From Camelus dromedarius (Eukaryota): a DNA stretch of 64,000 nucleotides. This document shows, piece by piece, positions 6,001-30,969 of this stretch. Position 1 is the first letter of the stretch; every line of letters begins with the position of its first letter. Both the position numbers and the translations under genes were made by a program. Under the pieces are notes generated by a model. The model worked only from the letters and a program-made list of their open reading frames with translations. It was not told where the DNA came from and searched no databases. Where the stretch lies: assembly GCF_036321535.1 (NCBI RefSeq), contig NC_087458.1, positions 1-64,000 on the forward strand, written 5' to 3'.

Positions 6001-9000
6001 CAGGCGACCCTTGATTCCTCCCCCAAGGGCTGGGGCACAGTTCGTGTCTGAGACACGCGTCCACGAGAAGCGGGCTTTGGGCCCGGATGCTTGGAGACAC
6101 GGGTGGCAGGGGTGTGAGGGAGGCTCCCAGTGGGCGCTGGGGACAGGGGTGGGGACGGGCCTGGACACACAGGTGACGCACACCCTCCCCCCGCAGACTA
6201 CCCGTGGCGTTGGAGCCGGGCCGTCCCCATGAACTCCGCCCTCATCCAGTGGCTGTACCTGCCCGACTTCTTCAGAGCCCCCAACTCCACCAACCTCATC
6301 AGTGAGCACCTGCTGCTGGAGCCCCGCCACACGGGGGGCTGGGTTCCCTTGTGGACGGGCAGTGTGCGAGCGGGGACCCTCCTCTCCAGCCCGCGAGGGA
6401 CGAGGCCCAGGCCTCACCGGCTGGTCCAGCCCTGTAGCTCCCTAGCAGGGATCTTTGTTCCATGAGTGTGCCCAGTCCTGCAGACAGATCCCTTGAGACT
6501 GGGGGGCCCACATCACGTGCACCCCTGCACAGAGACACGTGCCTGCTCGCAGGTGTGGACGCGGGTGTGCAGACGGAGGCCGTGAGGCGTGCAGTCAGGC
6601 TCCTGTGGGTCTTGTTTGCTGACATGTGTGCAGTGTGTGCGGAGCCACACGTGCACATGCAGAATGTGTACAGCAGGCGTGTTCTCTGATGTCTGTGTGC
6701 CTGTCCACACTGTGTGTAGGTGCTGGTGTCCACATAGGTGGATGCTTGCACCACTCCCCCCACACACTGCAACCTCTCTCTGGCCAGGGGCCTGAGGGCA
6801 GTGCCGGACGTGCCTGGCACTCCCCAGGGTGCAGCCCAGCAGTGCCCCCGTGTGCCCGCAGGTGACTTCCTCCTGCTGCTCTGCGCCTCCCAGCAGTGGC
6901 AGGTGTTCCTGGCTGAGCGCACGGAGGAGTGGCAGCACATGGCTGGCATCAACACTGACCACCTGGAGCCGCTGCGGGGGGAGCCCAACCCCGTGCCCAA
7001 CTTCATCCACTGCAGGTGGGTGTCACAGCGGCCAGGACCGGGGCCCCTGGGGCTGCAGAGGCGGCAGTTGGCAGGGCGGACGGACGTGCCTGGGCTCCAG
7101 CAGGACTGAGCCGGGCAGGCCCTGCCAGCGGCGTCCCCGTGGCCAGGACGAGGGGTGGTCGCTGACCCTGCCGAGGAGGGGGCCTGCAGGGGAGGCCGTA
7201 GTGCCCGGGCCCTGCAGTGACGCCCTGCCCACAGGTCCTACCTCGACATGCTGAAGGTGGCCGTCTTCCGCTACCTCTTCTGGCTGGTGCTGGTGGTGGT
7301 GTTCGTCACGGGCGCCACGCGCATCAGCGTCTTCGGGCTGGGCTACTTGCTGGCCTGTTTCTACCTGCTGCTGTTCGGGACCAGCTTGCTGCAGAAAGAC
7401 ACGCACTCCCGCCTCGTGCTGTGGGACTGCCTCATCCTCTACAATGTCACCGTCATCATCTCCAAGAACATGCTCTCGGTGAGCCCCGCCCCACCCCCAC
7501 CCCCGCCCTCGCCTCGCCTCGCCTCGCCTCGCCGCCCAGGCTGACCCTCCTGCCACCCCCAGCTCCTGTCCTGTGTCTTCGTGGAGCAGATGCAGAGCAG
7601 CTTCTGCTGGGTCATCCAGCTCTTCAGCCTCGTGTGCACTGTCAAAGGCTACCACGACCGTGAGTGGGCGGGGCGGGTGTCCAGGGGCGCAGGGGCGAGC
7701 GGCTCCCAGGCCTGACCTGGGCCACTGTCTGTCTGCAGCCAAGGAGATGCTGGGCCGGGACCAGGACTGCCTGCTGCCCGTGGAGGAGGCCGGCGTCCTG
7801 TGGGATAGCATCTGCTTCCTGTTCCTGCTGCTGCAGCGCCGCGTCTTCCTCAGCCGCTACTTCCTGCACGTCAGGGCCGAGCTCCAGGCCACTGCCCTGC
7901 AGGCCTCCAGGTGGGCCCCTGCCTTGTGTCCCCTCGTCACCACTCTGCAACATGACACGCCACCCACGGGAGGCCTGAGGACCTTGTCACGAGTGTGGTG
8001 GTGCGTGGCGTCAGCCCGGATCTGCCACTGGCTGACATTTAGGCCCCATGTGGCTGCCACGTGGGCCCAAGGGTTCACTCCTCCCTGACTCTGCGCTTTG
8101 GTCAAGGAGCCAGCTAACCTCCTGTCCCCCGATTTCGACCCCATGAGGCTGGGGGCTGCTGGAGGGTCTCCCTCTGACTACTGCACCTGGTGGCAGGGGG
8201 TGTCGAGTGGGGGCCGGCACCATGGCATGAGCAGCAGGCCTGGGCAGCTGGGCTGAGCGTGGCTGGTGGGGCGGGGAGGGTCGGGGATCGAGCAGCCGGC
8301 ACTGAGTGCCCCATCCTCTCCCCTCACAGGGGTTTCGCCCTCTACAATGCTGCCAATCTCAAGACCATCGAGCTTCACCGCAGGGCGGAGGAGAAGTCCC
8401 TGGCCCAGCTGAAAAGACAGTAGGTGCCGTCCGGGCGGGGCCCTGCGGGCTCTCTGGGCAGCCCAGCACTGAGCCGCCTCCCGGCCCGCAGGATGGAGCG
8501 CATCCGGGCCAAACAGGAGAAGCACAGGCAAGGCCGGGCCGGCCGCAGCCGCCTGCAGGACTCGCCAGGCCCCGGGCAGGAGCCAGGTGAGCGTGGATGG
8601 AGCCTCGGAGGGCCCCGCACCCCCTGTGTCCCCGCCCGCCGGAGCCTGCCCGCGTCTGTGCCGTGAGCTGTCCCACGGGGCTTCCAGCCCGTCCGCCCTG
8701 TGCTGTGTGGTTGCTCTGGCCCTGCAGGCCACATAGCTGGCCGTCAGTGTCTGTGCGCACTTGTGGGCTCTCCTCTGCTCCCCAGGGTCTATATGTGGCC
8801 CCTTCGACGCCTCACGGGCTCTGCGTCTGTCTCTGCTGAGGGGCCACCTCCCCGGCCCTGCCCCTCCCTGCTGGCTCACGCTCCCCCCTGCCCTCCCACA
8901 GGGCCCGGCAGTCCAGGGGGCTCCTCCCCGCCACAGCGACAGTGGTGGCGGCCCTGGCTGGACCACGCCACAGGTACTGCCCCAACCTGGCCTGCCCTGC

Positions 9001-16348: not shown

Positions 16349-19300
16349 TCAGCTCCCACCGGGCAGCGCCTCATCATCGCGGTCCCCCAGCAGATACGCT
16401 TGGATCTCCTGCTCGCCCCCGGCCCTGGGGGAAGCCACACGGGAGGAAGTCCCACAGGTTCACACACCCAGAAGCCCCCCCTCGGGGCTCCCCAGCAGAG
16501 CAAACAGTACCTCTGGCTGCGGAGCTGGGCCTCGGCCAGGATGTAGGGCGGCAGGGAGTCCAGGGAGGGCTGTAACAGAGAGCCGGGATGGGTGTGGGCC
16601 GCGTGGGGCAGGGGGGGGCTGGTCCAGGAGCTGGGCAGGCGTCCACTCACCAGGTCCCTCGCGTTCACACGGCAGCCATAGCACAGCTGCCCCACCACAC
16701 GGGCTCGGGGGTCCTCCCTGCAGGCAGAGCTGGACCTGGGTGCCTGCTCTCGCCCTCAGCGAGTGTCCTGGGGGCCACCCCCACCCCGTGCGGCTGCCAG
16801 GTGCTGACCACGGTGGGGACAGGAGGACAGGACGAGGCAGGGACTCACCTCGCACAGCAGCCTTGGGCACCGCCCAGCCCTGGACAACAGCAGAGGGTGG
16901 TGGGCGTCCCGGCCTCAGCTTGTGGGCCGGGGGCCTGCATCTGGCAGAGATGTGATGAGGTCTGAGCCCCAAAAGCCGTGGCACTGTCTGGAAGCAGAGA
17001 GAAGCTAAGGGGGCCTCGAGGGCTACAGAACCCTAACACACACCCGTGCGTGGCCCTCCCCCGAGCGCCCATGGAGGCCAGGACAGACCAGCACTGTCGA
17101 CGTCCAGGGTGCACAGGCAGAGCAGGCAGCGGGGGCCAGGGGGGCTGGCAGCACAGCCGTCCCTGGGGGCCTTGACCAGCTTCTCACTTGTCCTGGGGGG
17201 GGGGCAGGGGGGCAGGGCACTGAGGCACAGCTGGCTGGGGGCCTCCACTCTCAGCTCCTGTCCCAAGTACCAGGATGGAGGGCTTGGAGCCCACACACCC
17301 ACACACACACACCTGTACACGGTGCTGACGGTGGAGGGGAACTGGGCCTGCAGCCTGAGCAGGAAGGCCTCCATCAGCCGGTGGATGCTGGCCTTCTCGG
17401 GGGCCTGGAGCAGACGGGTTGGGGGCCTCAGTCAGAGGGGCAGCCCCCGGGCCTGCTCAGGGGCCACCACTTCTAGAGACCCCTCACTGTCAAGCACAGA
17501 TGCTGTTAAATAAAGCACCCAACACAGGTCATCCTGTCCCACTGTCCCCTCGCCCACCTGTGTGACGCCCAACGGGCACCCCCTTCCTCAAGTCTGTACC
17601 CCTAGTGTGCGCTCCACTGGGGCACCAGGCAGAGCCCACCCCGCCGACCCCAGCCCACCTTGGTGTCGACGGCCGGTGTAAAGACAGATGGGACGGCAAA
17701 CAGGCGGTTGTAGAAGGCGACCTCCTTCAGCGTGTGCTCACGCATTGGCCGCACCACCACCACGTCACCATGCCGCTCGTCCGAGAAGCCCTGGGGGAAC
17801 AGGCGTTCCTCAGGACACTCAGCTGACTGGCTCACAGTTCCTGTCCTTCCCTGCCAGCTGGCGGGGGGTCTTTGGCCCCACCCCGTGGGAGACCCCAGGA
17901 CCAATTCATGAATCAAGTGACAGGGGACAGAAGGGTGAGGGTGGGGCCAGAGCAGCCGTGTGCACACCGTGTCCCAGGCGAGGAAGGCCCCTCTCCCAAG
18001 TGCCAGGCTGGTCATGAGCTTCACGGCCAGGCGGGTGCAGCTGTCCCCTGCCATCACCTTAGAGTAGCCATGAGTCCGGGCCACGTGCAGGATCAAGTGG
18101 GTCCTGCAGAGCACGGCAGGAATCTCAGGGTGGGCAGGACCAGGACCCCGGGGGTAGGGAAGAGAAGGTCTCAGGAACTTGGTGGGGGCGATCAGGCAGG
18201 GACCCTGGGGCAGTGGAGGGGGCTCACCGCAGTGTCTGCAGAAGCTCCTCCTTGGCCGTCAGCGTCTTCACTGAATCGAACAGTCCGGACAGAGCTTCGG
18301 TCTGCACAGCTGTGGGGGGCCCGGCCAGGCTCTGGGGGCCCTGGGGGCGGGGCTGGCTCCAGGGCTCCTCCCCCGCTGCCCCCAGCACACACTGTTGCTG
18401 GAGGAAACTGTCCACGGCCGCCTTGTAGGCACCCTCGGTCCCCACCGACTCTGGCTCCTGGGCAAAGCAGCGTAGCACAGACGGTGGCAAGCCAAACACC
18501 TGGCGGGTGGGTGGGGAGAGCGTGAAGCCCGGCCCTCCACGTGGGGAAGCAGGCCTTTGGCCCTGTGGACACTGAGCAGGCACCTCCAGGGCCCTTGAGT
18601 GGGGACGGGCCGCCCACCTCTTCCAGGGCGATCACATGGCTCGGGAAGCCGACTCTCTGCAGGACCTGCTCCACCTCCACCAGAGTTCTGGCTCTGTCTT
18701 CGGGGCTCCGGCCACAGGCTGCTCCCTCTGGAAAATGCGGAATGACCACTTTACAGAAGAGGCGCACGCGGGCAGTCAGGGCCACCACCACTGCGCCTGT
18801 GGAGGGGTGTGCAGCAAGTCCTCTGGAGGCCGCTGGGGGCCAAGCCGTCTCCTTGGGGGCGTTTTCAGGGTGGTGGGTTCTCTGACAGTGGGGTGGGAAG
18901 GCCCCCTCTGGCCGTGCATTCGGAGTTCTCACCAAGTGCCCCTGATCCCGTGGAGAGACCTCAGACAACAGCAGGGCCGTCCGCTGAACCCGGGCGCTAT
19001 CTCCAGGGGAACGCCCCCACCAGGGCCCTGCACAAGCCCAGTGCCAGCTGTTGGAGGGGTCGCCCCGAGCGCCAGGGCCTGGGGACAGACAGACACGTAC
19101 CGTCGACGTAGATGACTCCTGGCACAAAACGCAGCCTCTTGGCAGAATCTCGACTCAGGCCCTGGAGGGGACAGGACAGGACTTCAGCTCTGCGGCCAGA
19201 AGCCACAAGACGCTGCTGATGGTCTGCTCCCCGTCTCGAACAAGTACCCTCCTGGACTGCACTGGTCAGGCCGCTCAGCCCGGGTGCCAGGCAGGCCCGG

Positions 19301-22300: not shown

Positions 22301-23423
22301 CGCCTGCCAGAGACACCAGGACGCTCTAATCTGCCCTTGATGTGTTCCAGCTGCCCCAGAAAAGCTCACCTCGCCTGCACCACAGACCACTTTCACTCCC
22401 AACTCTCCCCATGAGCTTCGTCAGTGTCTTCCTGTCACCTGTGGCACAGCTCGACGATGTAGTGGTACTCAGAAAGCCGATCAGGAAACCAATCCCCCTC
22501 CACACACACAGCACCAGAACGTTACAAGCAAGGGCAAAGTGACGAGACACTTTCAAAGGCAACAAACAAAGCCACAGAAACCGTGGCAGTTGTGGCGGCT
22601 GAGTGAGGCTGCATTTGCCGGGTCTCCTCATGCCAGGCCTCACCTGCAGAAGGCGTCTCCTGCTCGAATCACCACCACAGGTGGGCCTTCCTTGCACTTC
22701 ACACACTTCTGCTCACGGCTTTGGAGACATGCGGGGAAGAGAACAAGAACACAGATTACACCCCCTCCCAGGGGCGTCAGGCACACGGTGGCCTGTTTTT
22801 CACCCCACGCTGGCGTACTAGAGAGGTCACGTGGCAGGCTGCACCACACAAACCAGGGCTTGTAGCTTATCTACACTACCACCCTGAGGAAAAGCCAAGG
22901 CCCTAGAAAGACCACAGCCTGTTAAAGTTGGCTCAGCGGGCACGTAAAGACCAACTCAGTTTCCCAAGGGCTGAGACAACGAGAGAGAACTTGCTCTGTG
23001 CGACCCTGGAGGGGAATGGAGCCAGCGAGTGGAAGCGACAAAAAGGCCTACTTTCCTGTAAGAGTAACGACAGCTTGGTCAGCGGCGGACCTGCCCCACT
23101 GGCTACACGAATCGGAGGTGCAAGCGCGCAGATGGAGCTCCTTCCTGGGGCTTCACCGCTGGCTTGACAGACACTCCCCGGGTGCTGCGGAGCGAGGTCC
23201 AGCCCCCGCCTTGACTCCAGCGCTGCTGGGCCCCGCCCTCGGCGTTACCCGGGCTTCCCGGAGCGCGGCCCCCGTGACTGACGGAAAAGCGCGGGCTGGA
23301 CCCTCGAGACAGGGCTCGCCGCCGGCGGGAGCGGCGGGAACGGCCGCCCAGCTCTTACCCGGGTCGTGTCAGCGGCGGCCCCCCAGGCGCGGACTCACGG
23401 TAGTCCTCGCCCACCTCGCACAT
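16349..23423 (-). CDS. CTU2: Cytoplasmic tRNA 2-thiolation protein 2
   Basis: 15 exons (5'->3'): 23423-23359, 22718-22644, 20456-20378, 20198-20139, 19161-19101, 18727-18618, 18499-18228, 18103-17968, 17790-17659, 17404-17313, 17192-17089, 16987-16849, 16717-16651, 16569-16511, 16424-16349 (TGA). Peptides: MCEVGEDY, REQKCVKCKE, LLAWSGGPSS (degenerate PP-loop), GDSCTRLAVKLM, RPMREHTLKEVAFY, QLCYGCRVN. Confidence 0.96.
20613..20705 (+). mobile_element. tRNA-derived SINE with 14-bp target-site duplication
   Basis: A box (AGCTCAGTGG), B-box-like (GGCTCAATTCC); TSD AAAAGCAGTGTCTC (20599-20612) and AAAAGCACTGTCTC (20706-20719). Confidence 0.85.
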
Positions 23424-24069
23424 GGTTGCGCCGGCTTGCTCTGTACGCGGCGGCGGGGCGCACCCTGACTACGTCACTGAGGCGCCGGCGCCGGCGTCAC
23501 GTGAGGCACGGGCCAGGGGCGGGCGCTCCCTGACTACGTCACCGAATCGCCGGAGCCCCGTGACGCACGGCCGGGGATGGACGGCCGCTGACTACGTCAC
23601 AGAGGTACTGGCGCTCCCTGATTGCGTCACAGAGGCGCCGGCACGCCGTGACGCACGGACCGGGGGACGGGTGCTTCCAGGCTACCTGACAGGGACACCA
23701 GCGCTGCCTGATTACATCACCGAAGCGCCGGAGACTCATGCACGGGCCGGGGCGGACGCTCCCTGATTACGTCACAGAGGCTCCGGAATTCTGTGACGCT
23801 TCGGCCGCCGGCGAGCGCTCGCTGGCAACATCACAGATGCGCCGGTACTCAGTGACATAAGGGCCAGAGGCGGGAGCTTCTTGACTACGTCACATAGATA
23901 CCAGCGCTTCCTGACTACGTCACCGAGGCGCCGGCGCGGCCGTGACGCGCGGGCCGGGGGCGGGCGCTCGTTACGTCAACCCCGCGCCGTCGCGGCCGTT
24001 ACGCGCAGGCCGGGCCGGGCCGGGCCGGGCCGGGACAGGACAGGGGCGGCGCCGCGGACCGGGCCCGGG
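23424..24069. promoter_or_regulatory. Bidirectional CpG-island promoter of CTU2 and RNF166
   Basis: 646 nt between divergent ATGs; CpG-rich; GC boxes (GGGCGG) and multiple CRE/ATF-like half sites. Confidence 0.9.
23460..23985. repeat. Degenerate ~30/59-bp tandem repeat carrying TGAYTACGTCAC
   Basis: Motif copies start at 23466, 23531, 23589, 23619, (23679), 23709, 23764, 23823, 23882, 23912, 23969, with shared flanks GCGCTCCC and AGAGGCGCCGG...GTGACGCACGGGCCGGGG. Confidence 0.85.
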
Positions 24070-27000
24070 ATGGCGATGTTCCGCAGCCTGGTGGCCTCGG
24101 CTCAGCAGCGGCAGCCGCCTGGCGGGCCCGCGGGCGGTGACAGCGGCCTGGAGGCGCAGTACAGCTGCCCCATCTGCCTGGAGGTCTACCACCGGCCGGT
24201 GGCCATCGGCAGCTGCGGCCACACGTGAGTGCGCCGGCCTCCGGGAGGCCGCGGGGTCGGGCGCCGCCGCGGGGAGGGCTCTGCAGACTCCCCGCGCAGC
24301 GCCTTTTCTGCATCCATCCGCCTCAGCCCAGCCTCCTGCCCGCCCGCCCCGGGTGCTCGATCCGACCCCCAGGTCGGCATATGGGGCCCACCTGCAGCCT
24401 TGCCTGGTCTCCGGTGCCCGGGGGTCGTTGACGGCCTCGGTGGGCCTCCCTGGGGACTCAGAGGGCAGCGGGCGCGACCTCTGCGCCGGTTGCTTTCGAT
24501 CTGATTTCGTGGAGACTGGGGTGGGCAGAGGTAAATAAATAACTTGTGACTTCTGCTGTCAACTCTTTTTCGAATCCGCTGTCTGCTTGTCTTGACTGCA
24601 GAGGAGAGAAGTTCCCTAAAGTTTAGGCATCGGCTTGTTTGAAGTCTGGCGCTATTTTGTTTTGATGGAGAACTTGGGTCACATCGGTCACTGAGCAAGC
24701 AGGCAGGCTGGCCCTCGGGATACCAGAAGCCACACACTTTGCTAGGGTTTCCATCTGTGCCATGGCCGAGTTGTTTCAGGAACAGACTCATGAGGATGTG
24801 GCTCTTCTAGCCAAGAGCTTCACTCAAGTCTGGGAGCTGCCAGCCTGGTTGGGAGGAGGCTGAGATCAGAGTGTCTGCTCTGCAACTCTCCCTAGTGCTG
24901 AATAATACAGCTCTTGAGTGAAATTAGCAGGGTGGAGAGAGGGGGCAGGAGGGCTTGGCTGCCAGCAGCTGCTGCGGAGGAGGTGGGGCCGAGGTGCACC
25001 CAGGCTGGTAGGAGGCCCTGGAACATTTTGCAAACAGAGGCATCTGACCTACGAGGTTCCTGATACAAAGAGGGAGCAGGGAGTTGGAACTGCTTGGGTG
25101 TGTGTGTAACTCTCATCACCCAGGGAGGCAGCAGGGATGGTGTCCGGAGCCAGGAAGGGCACACACGCGTGCACACATACACACACGTGCCGACAAGCAG
25201 CCCAGGCACCTGCCCACACCGGGAGACTTGCCTCAAAGGTGCTTTGCCTGCTTTTTCGTGCTGTTCGTGACCTTTCGGTAGGGGTGGCCTCTGAACAACA
25301 CTTGTCTCTTGTAAGTGGGTGTTTTAAGGTATGTTTAGCATCTTCCAGCCTATCATTGAGAGACGTGTAGGGCATGTCCCAGGCCTACTTTTAGAAAGCC
25401 TTTCCTAGGCTTTGGGTTGGTACCAACACTACCCCAGCCCCAGAATGTGGTGTTTCGGGTCTCCTGGTCAGCACAAATCTGTTTTCTCTCCCTTTTTTTC
25501 CAAATCAGTCTTTTCTTAAAAGGTGGTTTTCAGATTACAGAACTACAGAAGTTGTGGAGAAAGCTTGATCTACACACCCCCCGCCCCATGCTTTTCTTGG
25601 CAGAATCTGACACCTCTCTTTCCGGTTCTAAGGTTAGTTCTGGAGGAACCTCTTCAGCTTCTCCCTTAAAAAGACTTTCTCCCTGGTTCTACCTGCAGGC
25701 GTAAACAAACCTCCTGCCTGCTCTGTCTCTGCCTTGCACTTTCCCTAAGTTTCTTGTCCAGTGTTTCAAAGGCATGTGCACAGATGAACAAAAATGACTC
25801 CGAGGGTCGTGCCTCTCCTTTTACAAGGTTTGCTGGTGGCCTGATTCTGTCCCTCCGTGGCTCTCTGACTGGAAGCAGTTTCTTTCCACAAGATATGTTT
25901 TCTGATGGTGAGAGCAGCCCTGTCTGTGACCGGCACTTCTGCTCCAGCACCAGGCAGAGGGGCCAGGTTGTAGGGAGGGCTTTCGGGCAGGAGGCCGCTG
26001 GTAGGTATTGTGAAAGCGCTCCCAGGAACTCCCCAGGGCCCCAGAGGGAGCCAGTTAACTGTCACAGTCAGGGGACACCCTGGGCAGTGAGCCACATCCA
26101 GAACCAGACGCTACCCAGCTGTTTTTGACCCTCTGAGGAAGCCTCCCCCGAGGGCCAGTGTACGTTTGGGGTGGGGCTCTGTCCTGGCTGCCTCCGGCTT
26201 CTGTACCTCTTGTGTCATTCTCTCTGGTCAGCGTGTCACATCTGTCTCCCCGCCTGAGTGTCCCCTCGTGCTGTCTGTTAATGAACAGAGGTTGAAGAAC
26301 ATTAAGATGCTCATGTTTAAGGGAACCTGTTGGGAACAGTGATAACGGACGTTTTCGGAATCCTCCCTGTTCAGAGGTCCTGGGAGGCAGATGCTACATT
26401 ATTCTTTTTGTACAAGGAAAATGGGATCAGAGAGGCTGAGTGGAGTTCCCACGCATCCTGGCAAGGCTGCCAGGCCCTGGCCAGTCTCCCCTCGCCACCT
26501 TTAGCAGCTGTGCCCACCCCTCAGCTCCCCACGCTCCTGCAACAGAGCGTTTCCAGCCCCCTGCCGGGCTGCAGTCAGGCCAGTGAGCTGGCTTCTGTGC
26601 TCAGGGTCACAGGCCTCTGTCACTGCGCTCTGCTTCCTGAGAGGCCTGGGCCCATGGGCGGCTCACCTGCGTCTGTGCCTGAGTGAGCCGAGTCAGGGGG
26701 CCAGGACATGAGCGATTAGAAGCCCTTCCAGAAAAGGCTCAGGATGGCTCCAGGCACTGCCCAGCCTGCCAGCTTTCCCAGGTCACTGGTGCAGCTGCGC
26801 ATGTAGGAGGCTGGGCCAAGAGTGAGGTGCGTTGGCGGTGCCCATGGGCCTCCAGATAAAAAGCTGCTCCGCGCCAGCCCCTGGGGCCGGCGGGCGTTGG
26901 GGGCCAGCGAGGTGGTGCTGGAAACTAGGCCGCAGGCCAGGTGCTGTGTGGACACCTGATTCCGCCTCCATCTCCTCAGGGAGGGACACGAGACCTGCGG

Positions 27001-30000
27001 GCGGGCCAGGAGGCTAGGTCAGGCAGGGCTGTCTTGCTTCTCGAGACATCAGGCTTTTCTGTCTCCTCCCGCTGGGGGCACCCTGCGCCCCGACCCGAGG
27101 CCCACGATGGCTTGTCCCAAGTGCACTCCTGGGCCTCACCGAACGGCTTTAGGGAGATCCTGTTCCCTCATTTACCCTCGTCCCTCATGACACAACATCT
27201 CCAGGCACAGGGCCAAGAGGAGCCGGGGCAGGGGGGCCCGGGCACCGCCCCTTCTGTCACCATGCCTCTGCTCTGGCCAAGCCAGAGCCCTTCTTGAGTG
27301 GGGCGAGGGCACTGTCCCCAGGTTGGTGGCACTCACCTGGCCAACTTTGGCCCTGCCCCATCCAATGAGTCCGCAGCCCTGGGACCCTGCGGTTTCCTCT
27401 CTTGCCACTGTTAGCGATTTTACTCGCCAGAGCTTAGTAGGTGGGGGGTCTCCAGGGTCCCCCATGCTGTCCTGGAGCCCCCTGAGGTGTTGGCATCACC
27501 ACGTGGCAGTGAGACTGGTAGGCTGAGCCCTGGGCCACCTTCTGCAGCGAGAGCTGCTGCTGGGACCAGGGCTGTGGGGCCAGCTCGGGACCTGGGGAGC
27601 CACAGCCACAGCTCGGCCTGCATCGCAGGGTCCAGCAGGGGTCTCAAAGCCCACAGCTCGGTGGGTACCTGGGGTCATCTTTTAGCCAGATGGCGTCTGA
27701 CCGGCCAGCAGGACTCAGGCAGAGTGACCGCTGCCAGAGTGAGCCGCAGCCCTCAGGCCCACGTCCCGCCCCTGCAGGTTCTGCGGGGAGTGCCTCCAGC
27801 CCTGCCTGCAGGTGCCGTCCCCTCTGTGCCCGCTCTGCCGCCTGCCCTTCGACCCCAAGAAGGTGGACAAGGCCACCCACGTGGAGAAGCAGCTCTCATC
27901 CTGCAAGGCGCCCTGCCGGGGCTGCAGTAAGAAGGTACCCCCCAGCCCCAGGCCCCTGGCGGGAAGGGCTGGATGGGGCAGCTCTGACCGGGTTCCGCTC
28001 ACCAGCACGAGGAACTAGGTGCGTGCCTCCCTTCCCGTTGAGCAACTGGCCACTCCCCTGGCTTCTGGCGGGCCTTCCCCCACACTGGGTGGGCCTAGCC
28101 TAGGCGCTGAGCTGAAGCCCACCCTGGACACCCCAGTGACCTGCCCCCTGCAGGTGATGCCAGAGGGGAGGGCGGTGGGGACAGCAGACGGGGCCGCGGG
28201 CAGAACTGGGAGCTGAGGGCTGTTCCCTCCGGCAGCAGAGCCCCCCCGCCTCACTGCTCCCTCCGGGTGGATGCAGTGCCTCCCGCTGGACCCAGCCCAG
28301 GAACAGAGTTTGAACTTAGCTTTCAGATTTCACCATCTCTCGGGTTAACGAGTTCTACCATCTTACCACATAGGAAGCAGCCCCTGGTTGCTCAGTCCTC
28401 AAGGTCAAAGATCTGATTGTCCAGGGGCTGCCCTGGGCCTCCTTTGAGCTCCGGTGCTGCCCCCTCCTGGTGGGAGAACAGAGCAGGTCCCTGTGTGAGG
28501 CGGCCCTGCCCACAGCCTCAGTGCTGTGGGTCTGCCCGGGTGTGCAGGCCCAGAGGGGCAGGCCTCACTTGGTGCCCAGCCCTGTGCCAGCAGGACCTCC
28601 TCCTGTAGCCCAGACGCCTGGCTCAGCCCCTCACTGCTTCCTTGGTTCTATGAAGCGGCTTCCTGCTAGTGAGGTGTCTGCCCCCGGCCTCTCAGCACCT
28701 TCACCTGGCAGGATCAGTGGCGCCCATCCCCAGGGTGGGCTGACCGGGCCTGTCCTACCTCCTGGCTCCCTGTCTGCTCACGGGAGCCAGTGCCTCTTCC
28801 CTGTGCTGCTCTGAGATGGTCCCACCTTCAGCCAGAGTGGCAGCCGAGAAGGTCCTGTTTTATTTGGTTTTCTACTTCTTGGTAAGGAGTTTGACTGTCT
28901 ACAAGGACCTTGCCTGTTGGCTCCCGTTACTAGGGTATTTTTTCCCAAATAAACACTCTTCCTGGTCCCTCGTGAGCTGCCCCTCCCTTCCGCAGCTCCC
29001 CAGGGACCACAGCAGGGCTGCTCCCATCCAGTGGCTGGTGGCCGACTGCCCCCTGCATGGCTGCAGCTGAGAACCGTGAGCACCAGCTTCTGGTGCAGCT
29101 CAGTGGTGCGTCTGGGATCCGGAGTCCCCTTCTCCTGGTGTGTCTTCTCCAACAGGGGTGCTCGGCCCCCAAGGGAGCCTCCGGAACCCGCTCACGCAGC
29201 ACTGCTGGCTCAGGCGTCAGGAGCTGGACCAGCCCAGCTCGCTGCCAGCGGCCCTTGTCCTCCACTGCCTGACCCCTTCTCTCCTCCGCATCCTCATCCT
29301 AGGTGACGCTGGCGAAGATGAGGGTGCACATTTCCTCCTGCGTGAAGGTCCAGGAGCAGATGGCCAACTGTCCCAAGTTCGTCCCCGTGGTGCCCACGTC
29401 CCAGCCCATTCCCAGGTAGGCCGCCTTGCCTGGCGCCCAGAGTCCCCACCCTTTGTGGGGCAGCTCCTGGCCAACGTCAAGGGGAAGATGGGAGGGCTGC
29501 CATGTCCCCTCTGTGGGGGGGATCACCGCCTGCACATAGGAGACCCAGGAGGGCCCAGGCCAGGCCCACGGTCACCTCCCAGCAGGGGAGTGTGGTCCGC
29601 AGACAGGCCGGGACTGGATAGACACTCCCTCTCAGGGCAGGAGGCAGGAGGGCCGGTCTCTGCCACTGGCTCAGCCATGTCTGGGAAGGAGAGGGGCCAG
29701 GAGGTGACTAGGTGGGAGCTGCAGTGGGGTGCACCGAGGAGGGCGGGCCGGCCGGGCTGTTGGAGGGCGGCACTGCGCTGACCCCGCCCCGCCCNNNNNN
29801 NNNNNNNNNNNNNNNNNNNNNNNNNNNNNNNNNNNNNNNNNNNNNNNNNNNNNNNNNNNNNNNNNNNNNNNNNNNNNNNNNNNNNNNNNNNNNNNNNNNN
29901 NNNNNNNNNNNNNNNNNNNNNNNNNNCGACCCCTGCTGGGGTGCAGGGAGCCATGCCCGCCGCAGGCCCTCGGGGCTCACCCTTGCCCGCTGCGTTGCAG

Positions 30001-30969
30001 GTGTGCCCCGTCTGCTCGGCCATGCCCTGGGGCGACCCCAGCTACAAGAGTGCCAACTTCCTACAGCACCTGCTCCACCGGCACAAGTTCTCCTACGACA
30101 CTTTCGTGGTGGGTGCCCCCCCCGCCCTCTGCGGTGTCTGTGGCAGCCGCCTGCAGGGGGGTGCTGGTGGCAGTCAGATCCGTGTGGCCACTAGGGGCCC
30201 CGGGGCTCTGGGTCTGTTCACAGCAGGCCCACGGGGGACCCCTCTGTCCTGCGGTCCCTCAGCGCCAGGCCAGCGAGCTCACCTCACCTGGGCCCATTCT
30301 CTGGGAGAGGCACCATCACAGGGGCCCCATCTCCCCAGCTGTGCATGGGGCCTCAGGACAGAGACCCCTCTAGAGGGGATGCGTTCCCTCTGGGGCCTGG
30401 TAGAGAAGGTTCCACCAGACTCCCGTTGCCTTGAAAACCTCGGCTCTTCCTCCGCGCCCATGGCCTCTGGCCCACAGACCTGCCCTGGCTGTACGGCCTG
30501 GCCTGACTCCCACCCCAACCAGCCTCCGGGCCCCGTAGGGTCAGCACCCCCCCCCCCAATCTGTGCCTGGTCCTGATGGCTGGAGGCCACGGGGAGCTCT
30601 GGCTTCTCGACTTGCCTCAAGACCCTGTTCCTGAGTCTCTCATTCCATGTGTCCACCCCACACCGTCCGCTCAGCCCTCAGTCACTGGGCATGGTATCTG
30701 TGGGCAGCTCACTGCACAGACCTCGGCGGAAGCCAGACACCGTCCCCACAGAGAGGCTGCCTGGTGGTGCCGGGACCCCGTGACCATGCAGGGCTGGAAG
30801 GGAGCCGGGGACCTGGATGTGGCAGTGCTGGTCTGTTGGAGGTGACGGGACAGGGAGGAAGCCCTGAGAGGCCACTAGCACAGCCTGGCTCCTTGCCTTC
30901 CAGGACTATAGCATCGATGAGGAAGCCGCCTTCCAGGCTGCCCTGGCCCTGTCCCTCTCCGAGAACTGA
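24070..30969 (+). CDS. RNF166: E3 ubiquitin ligase RING finger protein 166 (RING-C2HC-2xC2H2-UIM); exon 4 not visible
   Basis: Exons 24070-24224 ([15 protein letters not shown]...[20 protein letters not shown]), 27778-27934 ([21 protein letters not shown]), 29303-29415 ([13 protein letters not shown]), [exon 4 expected in the gap 29795-29926], 30001-30108 ([20 protein letters not shown]), 30904-30969 ([24 protein letters not shown]). Confidence 0.95.
29795..29926. other. Assembly gap (132 N)
   Basis: Run of N flanked by GC-rich sequence, at the position of RNF166 exon 4. Confidence 0.99.

What the first reader, a model, noticed from the sequence alone, without database searches (positions are those of the whole stretch)
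23460..23985. Regular homotypic bZIP-motif array with fixed inverted geometry in the CTU2/RNF166 bidirectional promoter
Seen: about 10-11 copies of TGAYTACGTCAC (five exact TGACTACGTCAC at 23466, 23531, 23589, 23882, 23912), spaced about 30 or 55-65 bp apart. In five units the forward C(G/A)TCAC is followed by an inverted GTGAC(G/A) after a nearly invariant spacer: 17 nt (23542/23560), 17 (23630/23648), 17 (23775/23793), 17 (23834/23852) and 18 (23923/23942). The spacer sequences diverge while the half sites and spacing are kept, which suggests selection on geometry rather than simple repeat slippage. Known: (T)ACGTCA/TGACG are CREB/ATF half sites, and TTACGTCA is an ATF/C/EBP/PAR-bZIP hybrid site. 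Inference: a symmetric, copy-number-tunable module drives both genes, or forms repeated stem-loops or cruciforms.
Basis: partly seen in the sequence, partly recalled or inferred. Interest (0 to 1): 0.7.

Follow-up and report, generated by a model that had tools for sequence, protein, structure and literature searches.

The report
Camel promoter module amplified in tandem
The gap between the divergent CTU2 and RNF166 genes of this camel genome is filled by 11 tandem copies of a roughly 60-base promoter module that other mammals carry only two or three times, so the regular motif spacing is inherited by duplication and the array is a lineage-specific promoter minisatellite, a known kind of feature.

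Summary
There are five exact copies of TGACTACGTCAC at the stated coordinates, and eight copies within 2 mismatches inside 460 bp. The five forward/inverted pairs have 17-18 nt spacers.

The array is a head-to-tail repeat of 11 units: seven long (55-65 bp), three short (30 bp) and one ancestral proximal unit. It fills the roughly 645 bp between the start codons of CTU2 (minus strand) and RNF166 (plus strand).

Orthologous promoters that I fetched show the origin:
- Horse, bats, vole and opossum have two such modules. Musk deer has three, and narwhal has at least three beside an assembly gap.
- Each module is a CRE-like site, then about 20 nt, then TGACGC, then a GC box.
- Camelids amplified it: dromedary (identical to the window) 11 units, Bactrian-type camels 12, alpaca 20.

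The fixed spacing is therefore copied, not selected within the array:
- The inverted site decays at the average rate and is intact in only 5 of 12 alpaca long units.
- Short units lack it altogether.
- Hairpins form in 2 of 5 units.
- The forward TACGTCAC core is the best-kept block among paralogues (7% against 22% departures), which fits retained CREB/ATF-type sites.

No binding, transcription-start or within-species copy-number data could be obtained. This is a new member of a known kind, of moderate interest.

The parts
23402..23426 (-). Coding part of CTU2 exon 1 (start codon at 23426-23424, splice donor GTGAGT follows)
   Evidence: Read directly. CTU2 identity from Pfam PF10288 on the minus ORF 17033-17374 and 100% identity of an internal exon to Camelus dromedarius CTU2. 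The same start is used by the gene models in L013-L016.
23465..23529 (+). Unit 1, long (65 bp), nearest to CTU2. Exact motif, a 6-bp GGCGCC duplication, inverted site altered
   Evidence: Orthologous to alpaca unit 1.
23530..23587 (+). Unit 2, long (58 bp). Exact motif, intact inverted GTGACG after 17 nt
   Evidence: Identical in alpaca.
23588..23617 (+). Unit 3, short (30 bp). Exact motif; no inverted site or GC box (internal deletion of about 29 bp)
   Evidence: Identical in alpaca.
23618..23677 (+). Unit 4, long (60 bp). Core TGCGTCAC, intact inverted site after 17 nt
   Evidence: One of the two units whose predicted fold is the hairpin.
23678..23707 (+). Unit 5, short (30 bp), motif decayed
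   Evidence: Identical in alpaca although the motif is lost.
23708..23762 (+). Unit 6, long (55 bp). Core CpG decayed to CA; inverted site removed by a small deletion
23763..23821 (+). Unit 7, long (59 bp). TGATTACGTCAC; intact inverted site after 17 nt. The only unit that matches the E4F1 consensus
23822..23880 (+). Unit 8, long (59 bp). Both sites carry CpG-to-CpA decay
   Evidence: Alpaca keeps the CpG in the core.
23881..23910 (+). Unit 9, short (30 bp), exact motif
23911..23966 (+). Unit 10, long. Exact motif, inverted site after 18 nt, intact GC box. Counterpart of the distal ancestral module of other mammals and the unit most like all others
   Evidence: (80-92% identity to the other long units).
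23967..24012 (+). Unit 11, the ancestral RNF166-proximal module. TTACGTCAA; second site changed to GTTACG in camelids
   Evidence: Alignment A1 with seven other mammals.
24008..24034 (+). GGCCG pentanucleotide microsatellite (5.4 copies) between the array and the RNF166 start
   Evidence: Its length differs among camelid assemblies and it is present in horse, bats and narwhal.
24071..24226 (+). Coding part of RNF166 exon 1.
   Evidence: reading. Exon 1 from residue 19 onward is 100% identical to carnivore, horse and bat RNF166. Later exons are at about 27779-27937, 29303-29413, 30001-30108 and 30898-30966.

Best explanation
The array is a camelid-specific tandem amplification (a promoter minisatellite) of the ancestral CTU2/RNF166 bidirectional promoter module. 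The module is about 60 bp: a CRE-like site, about 20 nt, an inverted TGACGC, then a GC box. Therian mammals carry two copies, and musk deer and narwhal three or more. In the camelid stem lineage the distal copy was duplicated repeatedly, partly as a 90-bp dimer made of a long unit and a 30-bp deletion derivative. This reached at least 20 units. Later single deletion events left 12 units in Bactrian-type camels and 11 in the dromedary, which is the window. The regular motif spacing and fixed inverted geometry are therefore inherited from the copied unit. Inferred, not shown: the units that keep an intact ACGTCA core (8 of 11 here, counting GCGTCA) act as a homotypic cluster of CREB/ATF-type bZIP sites in the unmethylated CpG-island promoter. 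The amplification also moves the two core promoters about 430 bp further apart than in other mammals.
For: Head-to-tail structure and unit sizes. Two to three modules in 190-310 bp intergenic regions of musk deer, vole, opossum, bats and horse, and at least three in narwhal: alignment A1. Same spacing outside camelids (20 nt). The window array is identical to that of the Camelus dromedarius assembly (L013, which may be the same assembly as the window); unit counts are 11, 12 and 20 in three camelid lineages, with one-to-one orthology of the flanking units. Unit 10 is the unit closest to all others (80-92%), as expected of the source copy. Short units equal long units minus about 29 bp. The forward core TACGTCAC is the best-kept block among paralogues (7% departures against 22% overall, Fisher p about 8e-5, cells not fully independent). 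The orthologous array evolves at 2.0% between dromedary and alpaca, against 3.7-4.5% in the flanks. The stretch is held at full word share by 14 runs from at least seven studies.
Against: At the orthologue level substitutions are not depleted in the motif (3 of 12 fall in the 13-nt motif, which makes up about a quarter of the columns). Fully decayed units are as well conserved as intact ones, so the low recent rate may be regional (CpG island) rather than site-specific. Loss of eight units in Camelus and one more in the dromedary was tolerated, which fits weak or no selection on copy number. The camelid core (CTACGTCA) has lost the left half of the full CRE palindrome that bats, narwhal and musk deer carry, so affinity for CREB/ATF may be lower than in the ancestor.
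Confidence: 0.78

Rival explanations
1. The array is a selected, geometry-constrained regulatory device. Pairs of inverted bZIP half sites at a fixed 17-18 nt spacing are maintained by selection in each unit, and copy number tunes the output of both genes.
For: The spacing of the two half sites in the ancestral module is kept at 20 nt in musk deer, narwhal, bats and horse, and in the vole despite a different spacer sequence. Copy number differs between camelid lineages. The array diverges at half the rate of its flanks.
Against: Inside the array the inverted site departs from consensus at the average rate (21% against 22%) and is intact in only 5 of 12 alpaca long units and 4 of 8 in the window. 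Eight of 20 alpaca units and 3 of 11 window units are 30-bp forms with no inverted site. Units with indels in the spacer persist (units 1 and 6). The camelid proximal ancestral unit has itself lost GTGACG. Keeping a spacing for tens of millions of years in a 17-20 nt stretch needs no selection.
Confidence: 0.12
2. The array is a functionally inert minisatellite. Replication slippage or unequal exchange happened to amplify a piece of promoter, and the extra units are decaying neutrally while only the two ancestral units (10 and 11) and the CTU2-proximal unit 1 do the work.
For: Many units carry CpG-to-TpG/CpA decay in both sites (units 6 and 8; alpaca units 9, 10, 12, 16). Mean paralogue identity is only 73-78%. 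Large unit losses were tolerated. There is no motif bias among orthologous substitutions.
Against: The forward core is clearly better kept than the rest of the unit among paralogues. Fifteen of 20 alpaca units and 9 of 11 window units keep CGTCA. The array has persisted since before the split of camels and llamas, with unit-for-unit orthology.
Confidence: 0.3
3. The repeated inverted half sites form stem-loops in the transcript or cruciforms in the DNA, and these structures are the functional element.
For: Two of five units fold into the expected hairpin with z about -2.1 and -2.4. The whole array as RNA has z -2.4 against shuffles. In horse the proximal unit lies in the 5' UTR of an assembled RNF166 mRNA contig.
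Against: Three of five units do not form the hairpin (z -0.6, +0.2, -0.5). Arms are 6-9 bp with loops of 11-17 nt, far from what cruciform extrusion needs (established knowledge). The inverted site is not preferentially conserved. There are no compensatory changes to count, because the arms are the binding-site cores themselves.
Confidence: 0.03
4. The sites are E4F1 sites, and the array links CTU2 to the E4F1 programme that also controls the Elongator subunit Elp3 in the same tRNA U34 modification pathway.
For: E4F1 recognises RTGACGT(C/A)AY in vitro (PMC10541018). It directly controls Elp3 and U34 tRNA modification, upstream of CTU1/2 (PMC11696611). The full CRE-type sites of bats and narwhal fit that consensus, as does window unit 7.
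Against: Only 1 of 11 window units matches the consensus; the five exact copies have G where A is required. Neither E4F1 paper that I read names CTU2 as a target. The consensus overlaps the CRE, so a match does not discriminate between factors.
Confidence: 0.07

Closest known systems
Promoter minisatellites or VNTRs that multiply a cis-regulatory element, for example the 68-bp PDYN promoter repeat (one copy in non-human primates, one to four in humans; PMC1283535)
   Same: A unit of about 60 bp that is part of the promoter, single or few-copy in related lineages, is duplicated head to tail in one lineage, and copy number then varies.
   Different: Here there are 11-20 copies instead of 1-4. 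The array is old (unit-for-unit orthology between camels and alpaca) and partly decayed. It sits in a housekeeping-type bidirectional CpG-island promoter and fills almost the whole space between two start codons. Variation is shown between species only, and no effect on expression has been measured.
CRE / CRE half-site promoters bound by CREB/ATF-family bZIP factors (TGACGTCA, half site CGTCA; established knowledge)
   Same: Every unit is built around an ACGTCA core, and orthologues in bats, narwhal and musk deer carry the full palindrome. The core lies in a CpG island close to the start codons and next to GC boxes.
   Different: The camelid units have CTACGTCA or TTACGTCA, i.e. a half site with a changed left half. 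No occupancy data exist. TTACGTCA-type variants also fit PAR-bZIP/NFIL3-like and E4F1-like consensus sequences.
Homotypic clusters of transcription-factor binding sites
   Same: There are many same-orientation copies of one motif within a few hundred bases, and the motif core is better conserved than most of the surrounding unit among paralogues.
   Different: The cluster arose by tandem duplication of a whole module rather than by independent site gain, and selection on the cluster as such is not shown (no motif bias among orthologous substitutions).

Membership tests
Promoter minisatellite (tandem repeat of a regulatory module) | Head-to-tail copies of a 10-100 bp unit | tested here: met
   TRF periods 58 and 90. 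Eleven same-strand units of 30-65 bp. TRF also finds 30- and 59/60-bp periods in alpaca.
Promoter minisatellite (tandem repeat of a regulatory module) | Lies within a promoter | tested here: met
   It occupies 23465-24012, between the CTU2 start codon (23426, minus) and the RNF166 start codon (24071, plus). Transcription starts were not mapped.
Promoter minisatellite (tandem repeat of a regulatory module) | Copy number varies | tested here: inconclusive
   Varies between species: 11 (dromedary), 12 (Bactrian-type) and 20 (alpaca), against 2-3 in other mammals. Within species there are no data. The window and L013 are identical (and may be the same assembly), and 31-mer shares of runs cannot count units.
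CRE / ATF-CREB bZIP site | TGACGTCA palindrome or CGTCA half site | tested here: met
   CGTCA occurs 9 times on the + strand of the window array and 15 times in alpaca. There is no full palindrome in camelids, but there is one in bats, narwhal and musk deer.
CRE / ATF-CREB bZIP site | Occupied by CREB/ATF factors, with the central CpG unmethylated | not testable with these tools
   No ChIP, footprint or methylation data were available.
E4F1 site | Match to RTGACGT(C/A)AY (PMC10541018) | tested here: not met
   One match in the whole window, in unit 7. The five exact copies differ at the ninth position.
Cruciform- or hairpin-forming inverted repeat | Long arms with a short loop, folding better than shuffled sequence in each unit | tested here: not met
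   Arms of 6-9 bp and loops of 11-17 nt. The expected hairpin forms in 2 of 5 units; z-scores are -0.6, -2.1, -2.4, +0.2 and -0.5.
Selected homotypic site cluster | Motif columns conserved above the rest of the unit | tested here: inconclusive
   Among paralogues the feature is met for the forward core (7% against 22% departures) and not for the inverted site (21%). Among orthologues it is not met (3 of 12 substitutions fall in the motif).

The most novel reading that the evidence does not exclude
The amplification has been kept as a dosage device. With 8-15 intact CRE-like cores instead of two, the camelid CTU2/RNF166 promoter responds much more strongly to CREB/ATF-type signalling than that of other mammals, and each long unit, which copies the segment where RNF166 transcription begins in horse, may also act as an extra initiation site. 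Unit gains and losses (20, 12, 11) would then have retuned tRNA wobble-thiolation and RNF166 expression during camelid evolution.
Probability: 0.15. Interest if true: 0.55.

Novelty: new member of a known kind. Interest (0 to 1): 0.35.

Why it matters
This is a clean natural example of a whole promoter module, not just a simple sequence, being multiplied five- to ten-fold in one mammalian family. It was then held for a long time, with unit-for-unit orthology between camels and alpaca. The three copy-number states (11, 12, 20) and the two-unit outgroups form a ready-made deletion series. That series could test how the number of CRE-type sites and the distance between two divergent core promoters affect a bidirectional housekeeping promoter. 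It also carries a practical warning for motif-based scans: regular spacing inside a tandem repeat is inherited and is not by itself evidence of selection on geometry.

Tried and rejected
After it, one sandbox script used a 14-letter regular expression equal to the start of the RNF166 coding sequence to locate the start codon in the alpaca locus. Local blast queries were cut to leave the place out.

2. Pfam on exon 1 and on 20 ORFs gave only the CTU2 hit. RNF166 exons were located with short remembered peptides and confirmed with fetched orthologues.

3. Look-ups of short or secondary isoforms (camel X3, vampire bat X4) found no gene on record.

4. The vole RNF166 gene model starts at the wrong place. 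The true promoter was found by similarity at L003 8022-8210.

5. E4F1 as the specific factor: the consensus is matched by one unit only, and no paper links E4F1 to CTU2.

6. Cruciform or stem-loop reading: rejected.

7. The literature search for a described CTU2/RNF166 bidirectional promoter found nothing. A broad search for CRE-carrying promoter VNTRs was uninformative.

8. Earlier notes of this scan hold nothing on this feature.

Exons were searched one by one by reference, inside read-through ORFs with the 'region' option.

10. No human contig was fetched. Human-named proteins appeared in hit lists (P0042, P0142). P0042 went into one batch tblastn of all fetched proteins against the window. 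Neither was looked up or used further.

11. The N runs in the window (29795-29926) and in the narwhal promoter were left as they are.

Full report
**Observation**

The region 23460-23985 was read directly.
- With the Y variant and up to two mismatches there are 12 matches in 64 kb, against 3.1 expected from dinucleotide-preserving shuffles. None of 100 shuffles reaches 12. Eight of the matches lie on the + strand between 23466 and 23923.
- Tandem Repeats Finder reports periods of 58 and 90.
- Cutting at the motif gives 11 head-to-tail units: seven long (55-65 bp), three short (30 bp) and a last, more divergent one.
- The 90-bp period is a long unit plus a short unit. A short unit equals a long unit without about 29 bp, and the missing piece holds the inverted site and the GC box.

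**Setting**

- A minus-strand exon at 17033-17374 hits Pfam CTU2 (PF10288). An internal CTU2 exon is 100% identical to Camelus dromedarius CTU2.
- The CTU2 start codon is at 23426-23424 on the minus strand.
- RNF166 exons 1-3, 5 and 6 were located and are 94-98% identical overall to fetched mammalian RNF166 proteins. The middle and late exons are 100% identical to camelid isoforms.
- The RNF166 start codon is at 24071.

**Origin**

I used RNF166 and CTU2 orthologues found with single exons and their cluster members. With these I fetched the same intergenic region from 11 non-camelid assemblies and four camelid assemblies.

In the non-camelids the distance between the two start codons is 189-311 bp in every assembly except narwhal. 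It holds two modules in horse, two bat families, vole and opossum, and three in musk deer (alignment A1). Narwhal has at least three modules next to an assembly gap, which I did not fill.

Each module is a CRE-like site, about 20 nt, TGACGC and then a GC box. The CRE-like site is the full TGACGTCA palindrome in bats, narwhal and musk deer. The gap between CGTCA and TGACG is exactly 20 nt in musk deer, narwhal, both bat families and horse. In camelids it is 19 nt in three pairs and 20 nt in one. By eye it is also 20 nt in the vole, whose spacer differs in sequence, and 21 nt in opossum.

In camelids:
- The window array is identical to that of a dromedary assembly, apart from one base in the neighbouring GGCCG microsatellite. 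That assembly may be the same one as the window.
- Two Bactrian-type assemblies have one more long unit.
- Alpaca has 20 units.
- Alpaca units 1-6 and 15-20 are one-to-one orthologues of the Camelus units. Eight middle units are absent from Camelus. These eight differ from one another, so they are old, and a single deletion in Camelus is the simpler history.
- The unit missing in the dromedary is present in both Bactrian-type camels and alpaca, so the dromedary lost it.
- Window unit 10 corresponds to the distal ancestral module and unit 11 to the proximal one. Unit 10 is the unit most similar to all other long units (80-92%), as expected of the source copy.

The regular spacing inside the array is thus inherited from the amplified module.

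**Is anything in the array under selection?**

Paralogues. In an alignment of the 11 long alpaca units, departures from the consensus were as follows:

| Block | Departures from consensus |
|---|---|
| TACGTCAC core | 7% |
| First 11 nt of the spacer | 14% |
| Last 7 columns of the spacer | 44% |
| Inverted site | 21% |
| GC box and tail | 28% |
| Whole unit | 22% |

- The core differs from the rest with Fisher p about 8e-5. The cells are not fully independent because the units share ancestry.
- Over all 20 units the core columns are kept in 16-20 units each.
- The forward core is therefore preferentially kept. The inverted site is not: it is intact in 5 of 12 alpaca long units.

Orthologues. 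Dromedary and alpaca units differ at 12 of 601 aligned positions (2.0%), against 3.7-4.5% in the flanking 19 kb (binomial p about 0.005). However, only 3 of the 12 changes fall in the 13-nt motif, which is its share of the columns. Fully decayed units are as unchanged as intact ones. The low recent rate may therefore be regional.

Mean paralogue identity is 73-78%, and several differences are CpG-to-TpG/CpA changes inside the sites.

Together this fits an old amplification in which the forward site tends to be retained and the rest decays. It does not prove function.

**Structure**

As single-stranded DNA, only two of the five regular units fold into the hairpin made by the inverted half sites (z -2.1 and -2.4). 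The other three do not. Arms of 6-9 bp with loops of 11-17 nt are not cruciform material. The whole array as RNA has z -2.4, which is unremarkable for a G+C-rich repeat.

**Which factor?**

- The core is a CRE half site.
- E4F1 was attractive because it controls Elp3 in the same tRNA U34 pathway (PMC11696611) and recognises RTGACGT(C/A)AY (PMC10541018). But only one unit matches that consensus, and no paper links E4F1 to CTU2.
- CREB/ATF-family binding is the default inference and is untested.

**Transcripts**

- A spliced horse RNA contig starts inside the proximal module, 73 nt upstream of the start codon. It includes the GTGACGCG site, so in horse that site is transcribed.
- The alpaca RNF166 gene model (308 aa) starts at an ATG created by a mutated core (TATGCC) in unit 18, 71 codons in frame upstream of the usual start. 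This hints that the proximal units are transcribed there, but it may be an annotation choice.

**Verdict**

This is a real, non-random feature with an ordinary origin: a lineage-specific promoter minisatellite. Its closest known kind is promoter repeats such as the 68-bp PDYN element (PMC1283535). It stands out only for its size (11-20 units), its age, and its position between two divergent housekeeping-type genes. It is a new member of a known kind, of moderate interest.

Noticed in passing
L014 (alpaca), unit 18 of the array, about 213 nt upstream of the RNF166 start; the same unit in L015/L016: A mutated core (TATGCC) creates an upstream ATG. The alpaca RNF166 model (308 aa) starts there, 71 codons in frame with the normal start. 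The L015 model (341 aa, no RING hit) starts at the same ATG but 214 nt upstream, so out of frame. The dromedary has lost this unit.
   Followed up: partly
L002 9391-9790 (narwhal): The narwhal assembly has an N gap exactly in the CTU2/RNF166 intergenic region, next to at least three modules. The true unit number there is unknown and could be larger. The gap was not filled.
   Followed up: no
window 29795-29926: An N run lies inside RNF166 between exons 3 and 5. RNF166 residues about 142-180 (exon 4) found no match in the window, presumably because of it. It was left as it is.
   Followed up: no
window 24008-24034: The GGCCG microsatellite between the array and the RNF166 start differs slightly in length among the camelid assemblies. 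It is present in horse, bats and narwhal too.
   Followed up: partly
L003 8022-8392 (Microtus ochrogaster GCA_020004485.1): The RNF166 gene model of this assembly starts about 1.8 kb downstream of the real first exon and lacks the RING. The real exon 1 and promoter lie at 8022-8392.
   Followed up: partly
L012 1-73 and L010 4928-5000 (horse): An assembled horse RNF166 mRNA contig begins inside the proximal module, so the inverted GTGACGCG site is part of the 5' UTR there.
   Followed up: partly
I did not examine it.
   Followed up: no
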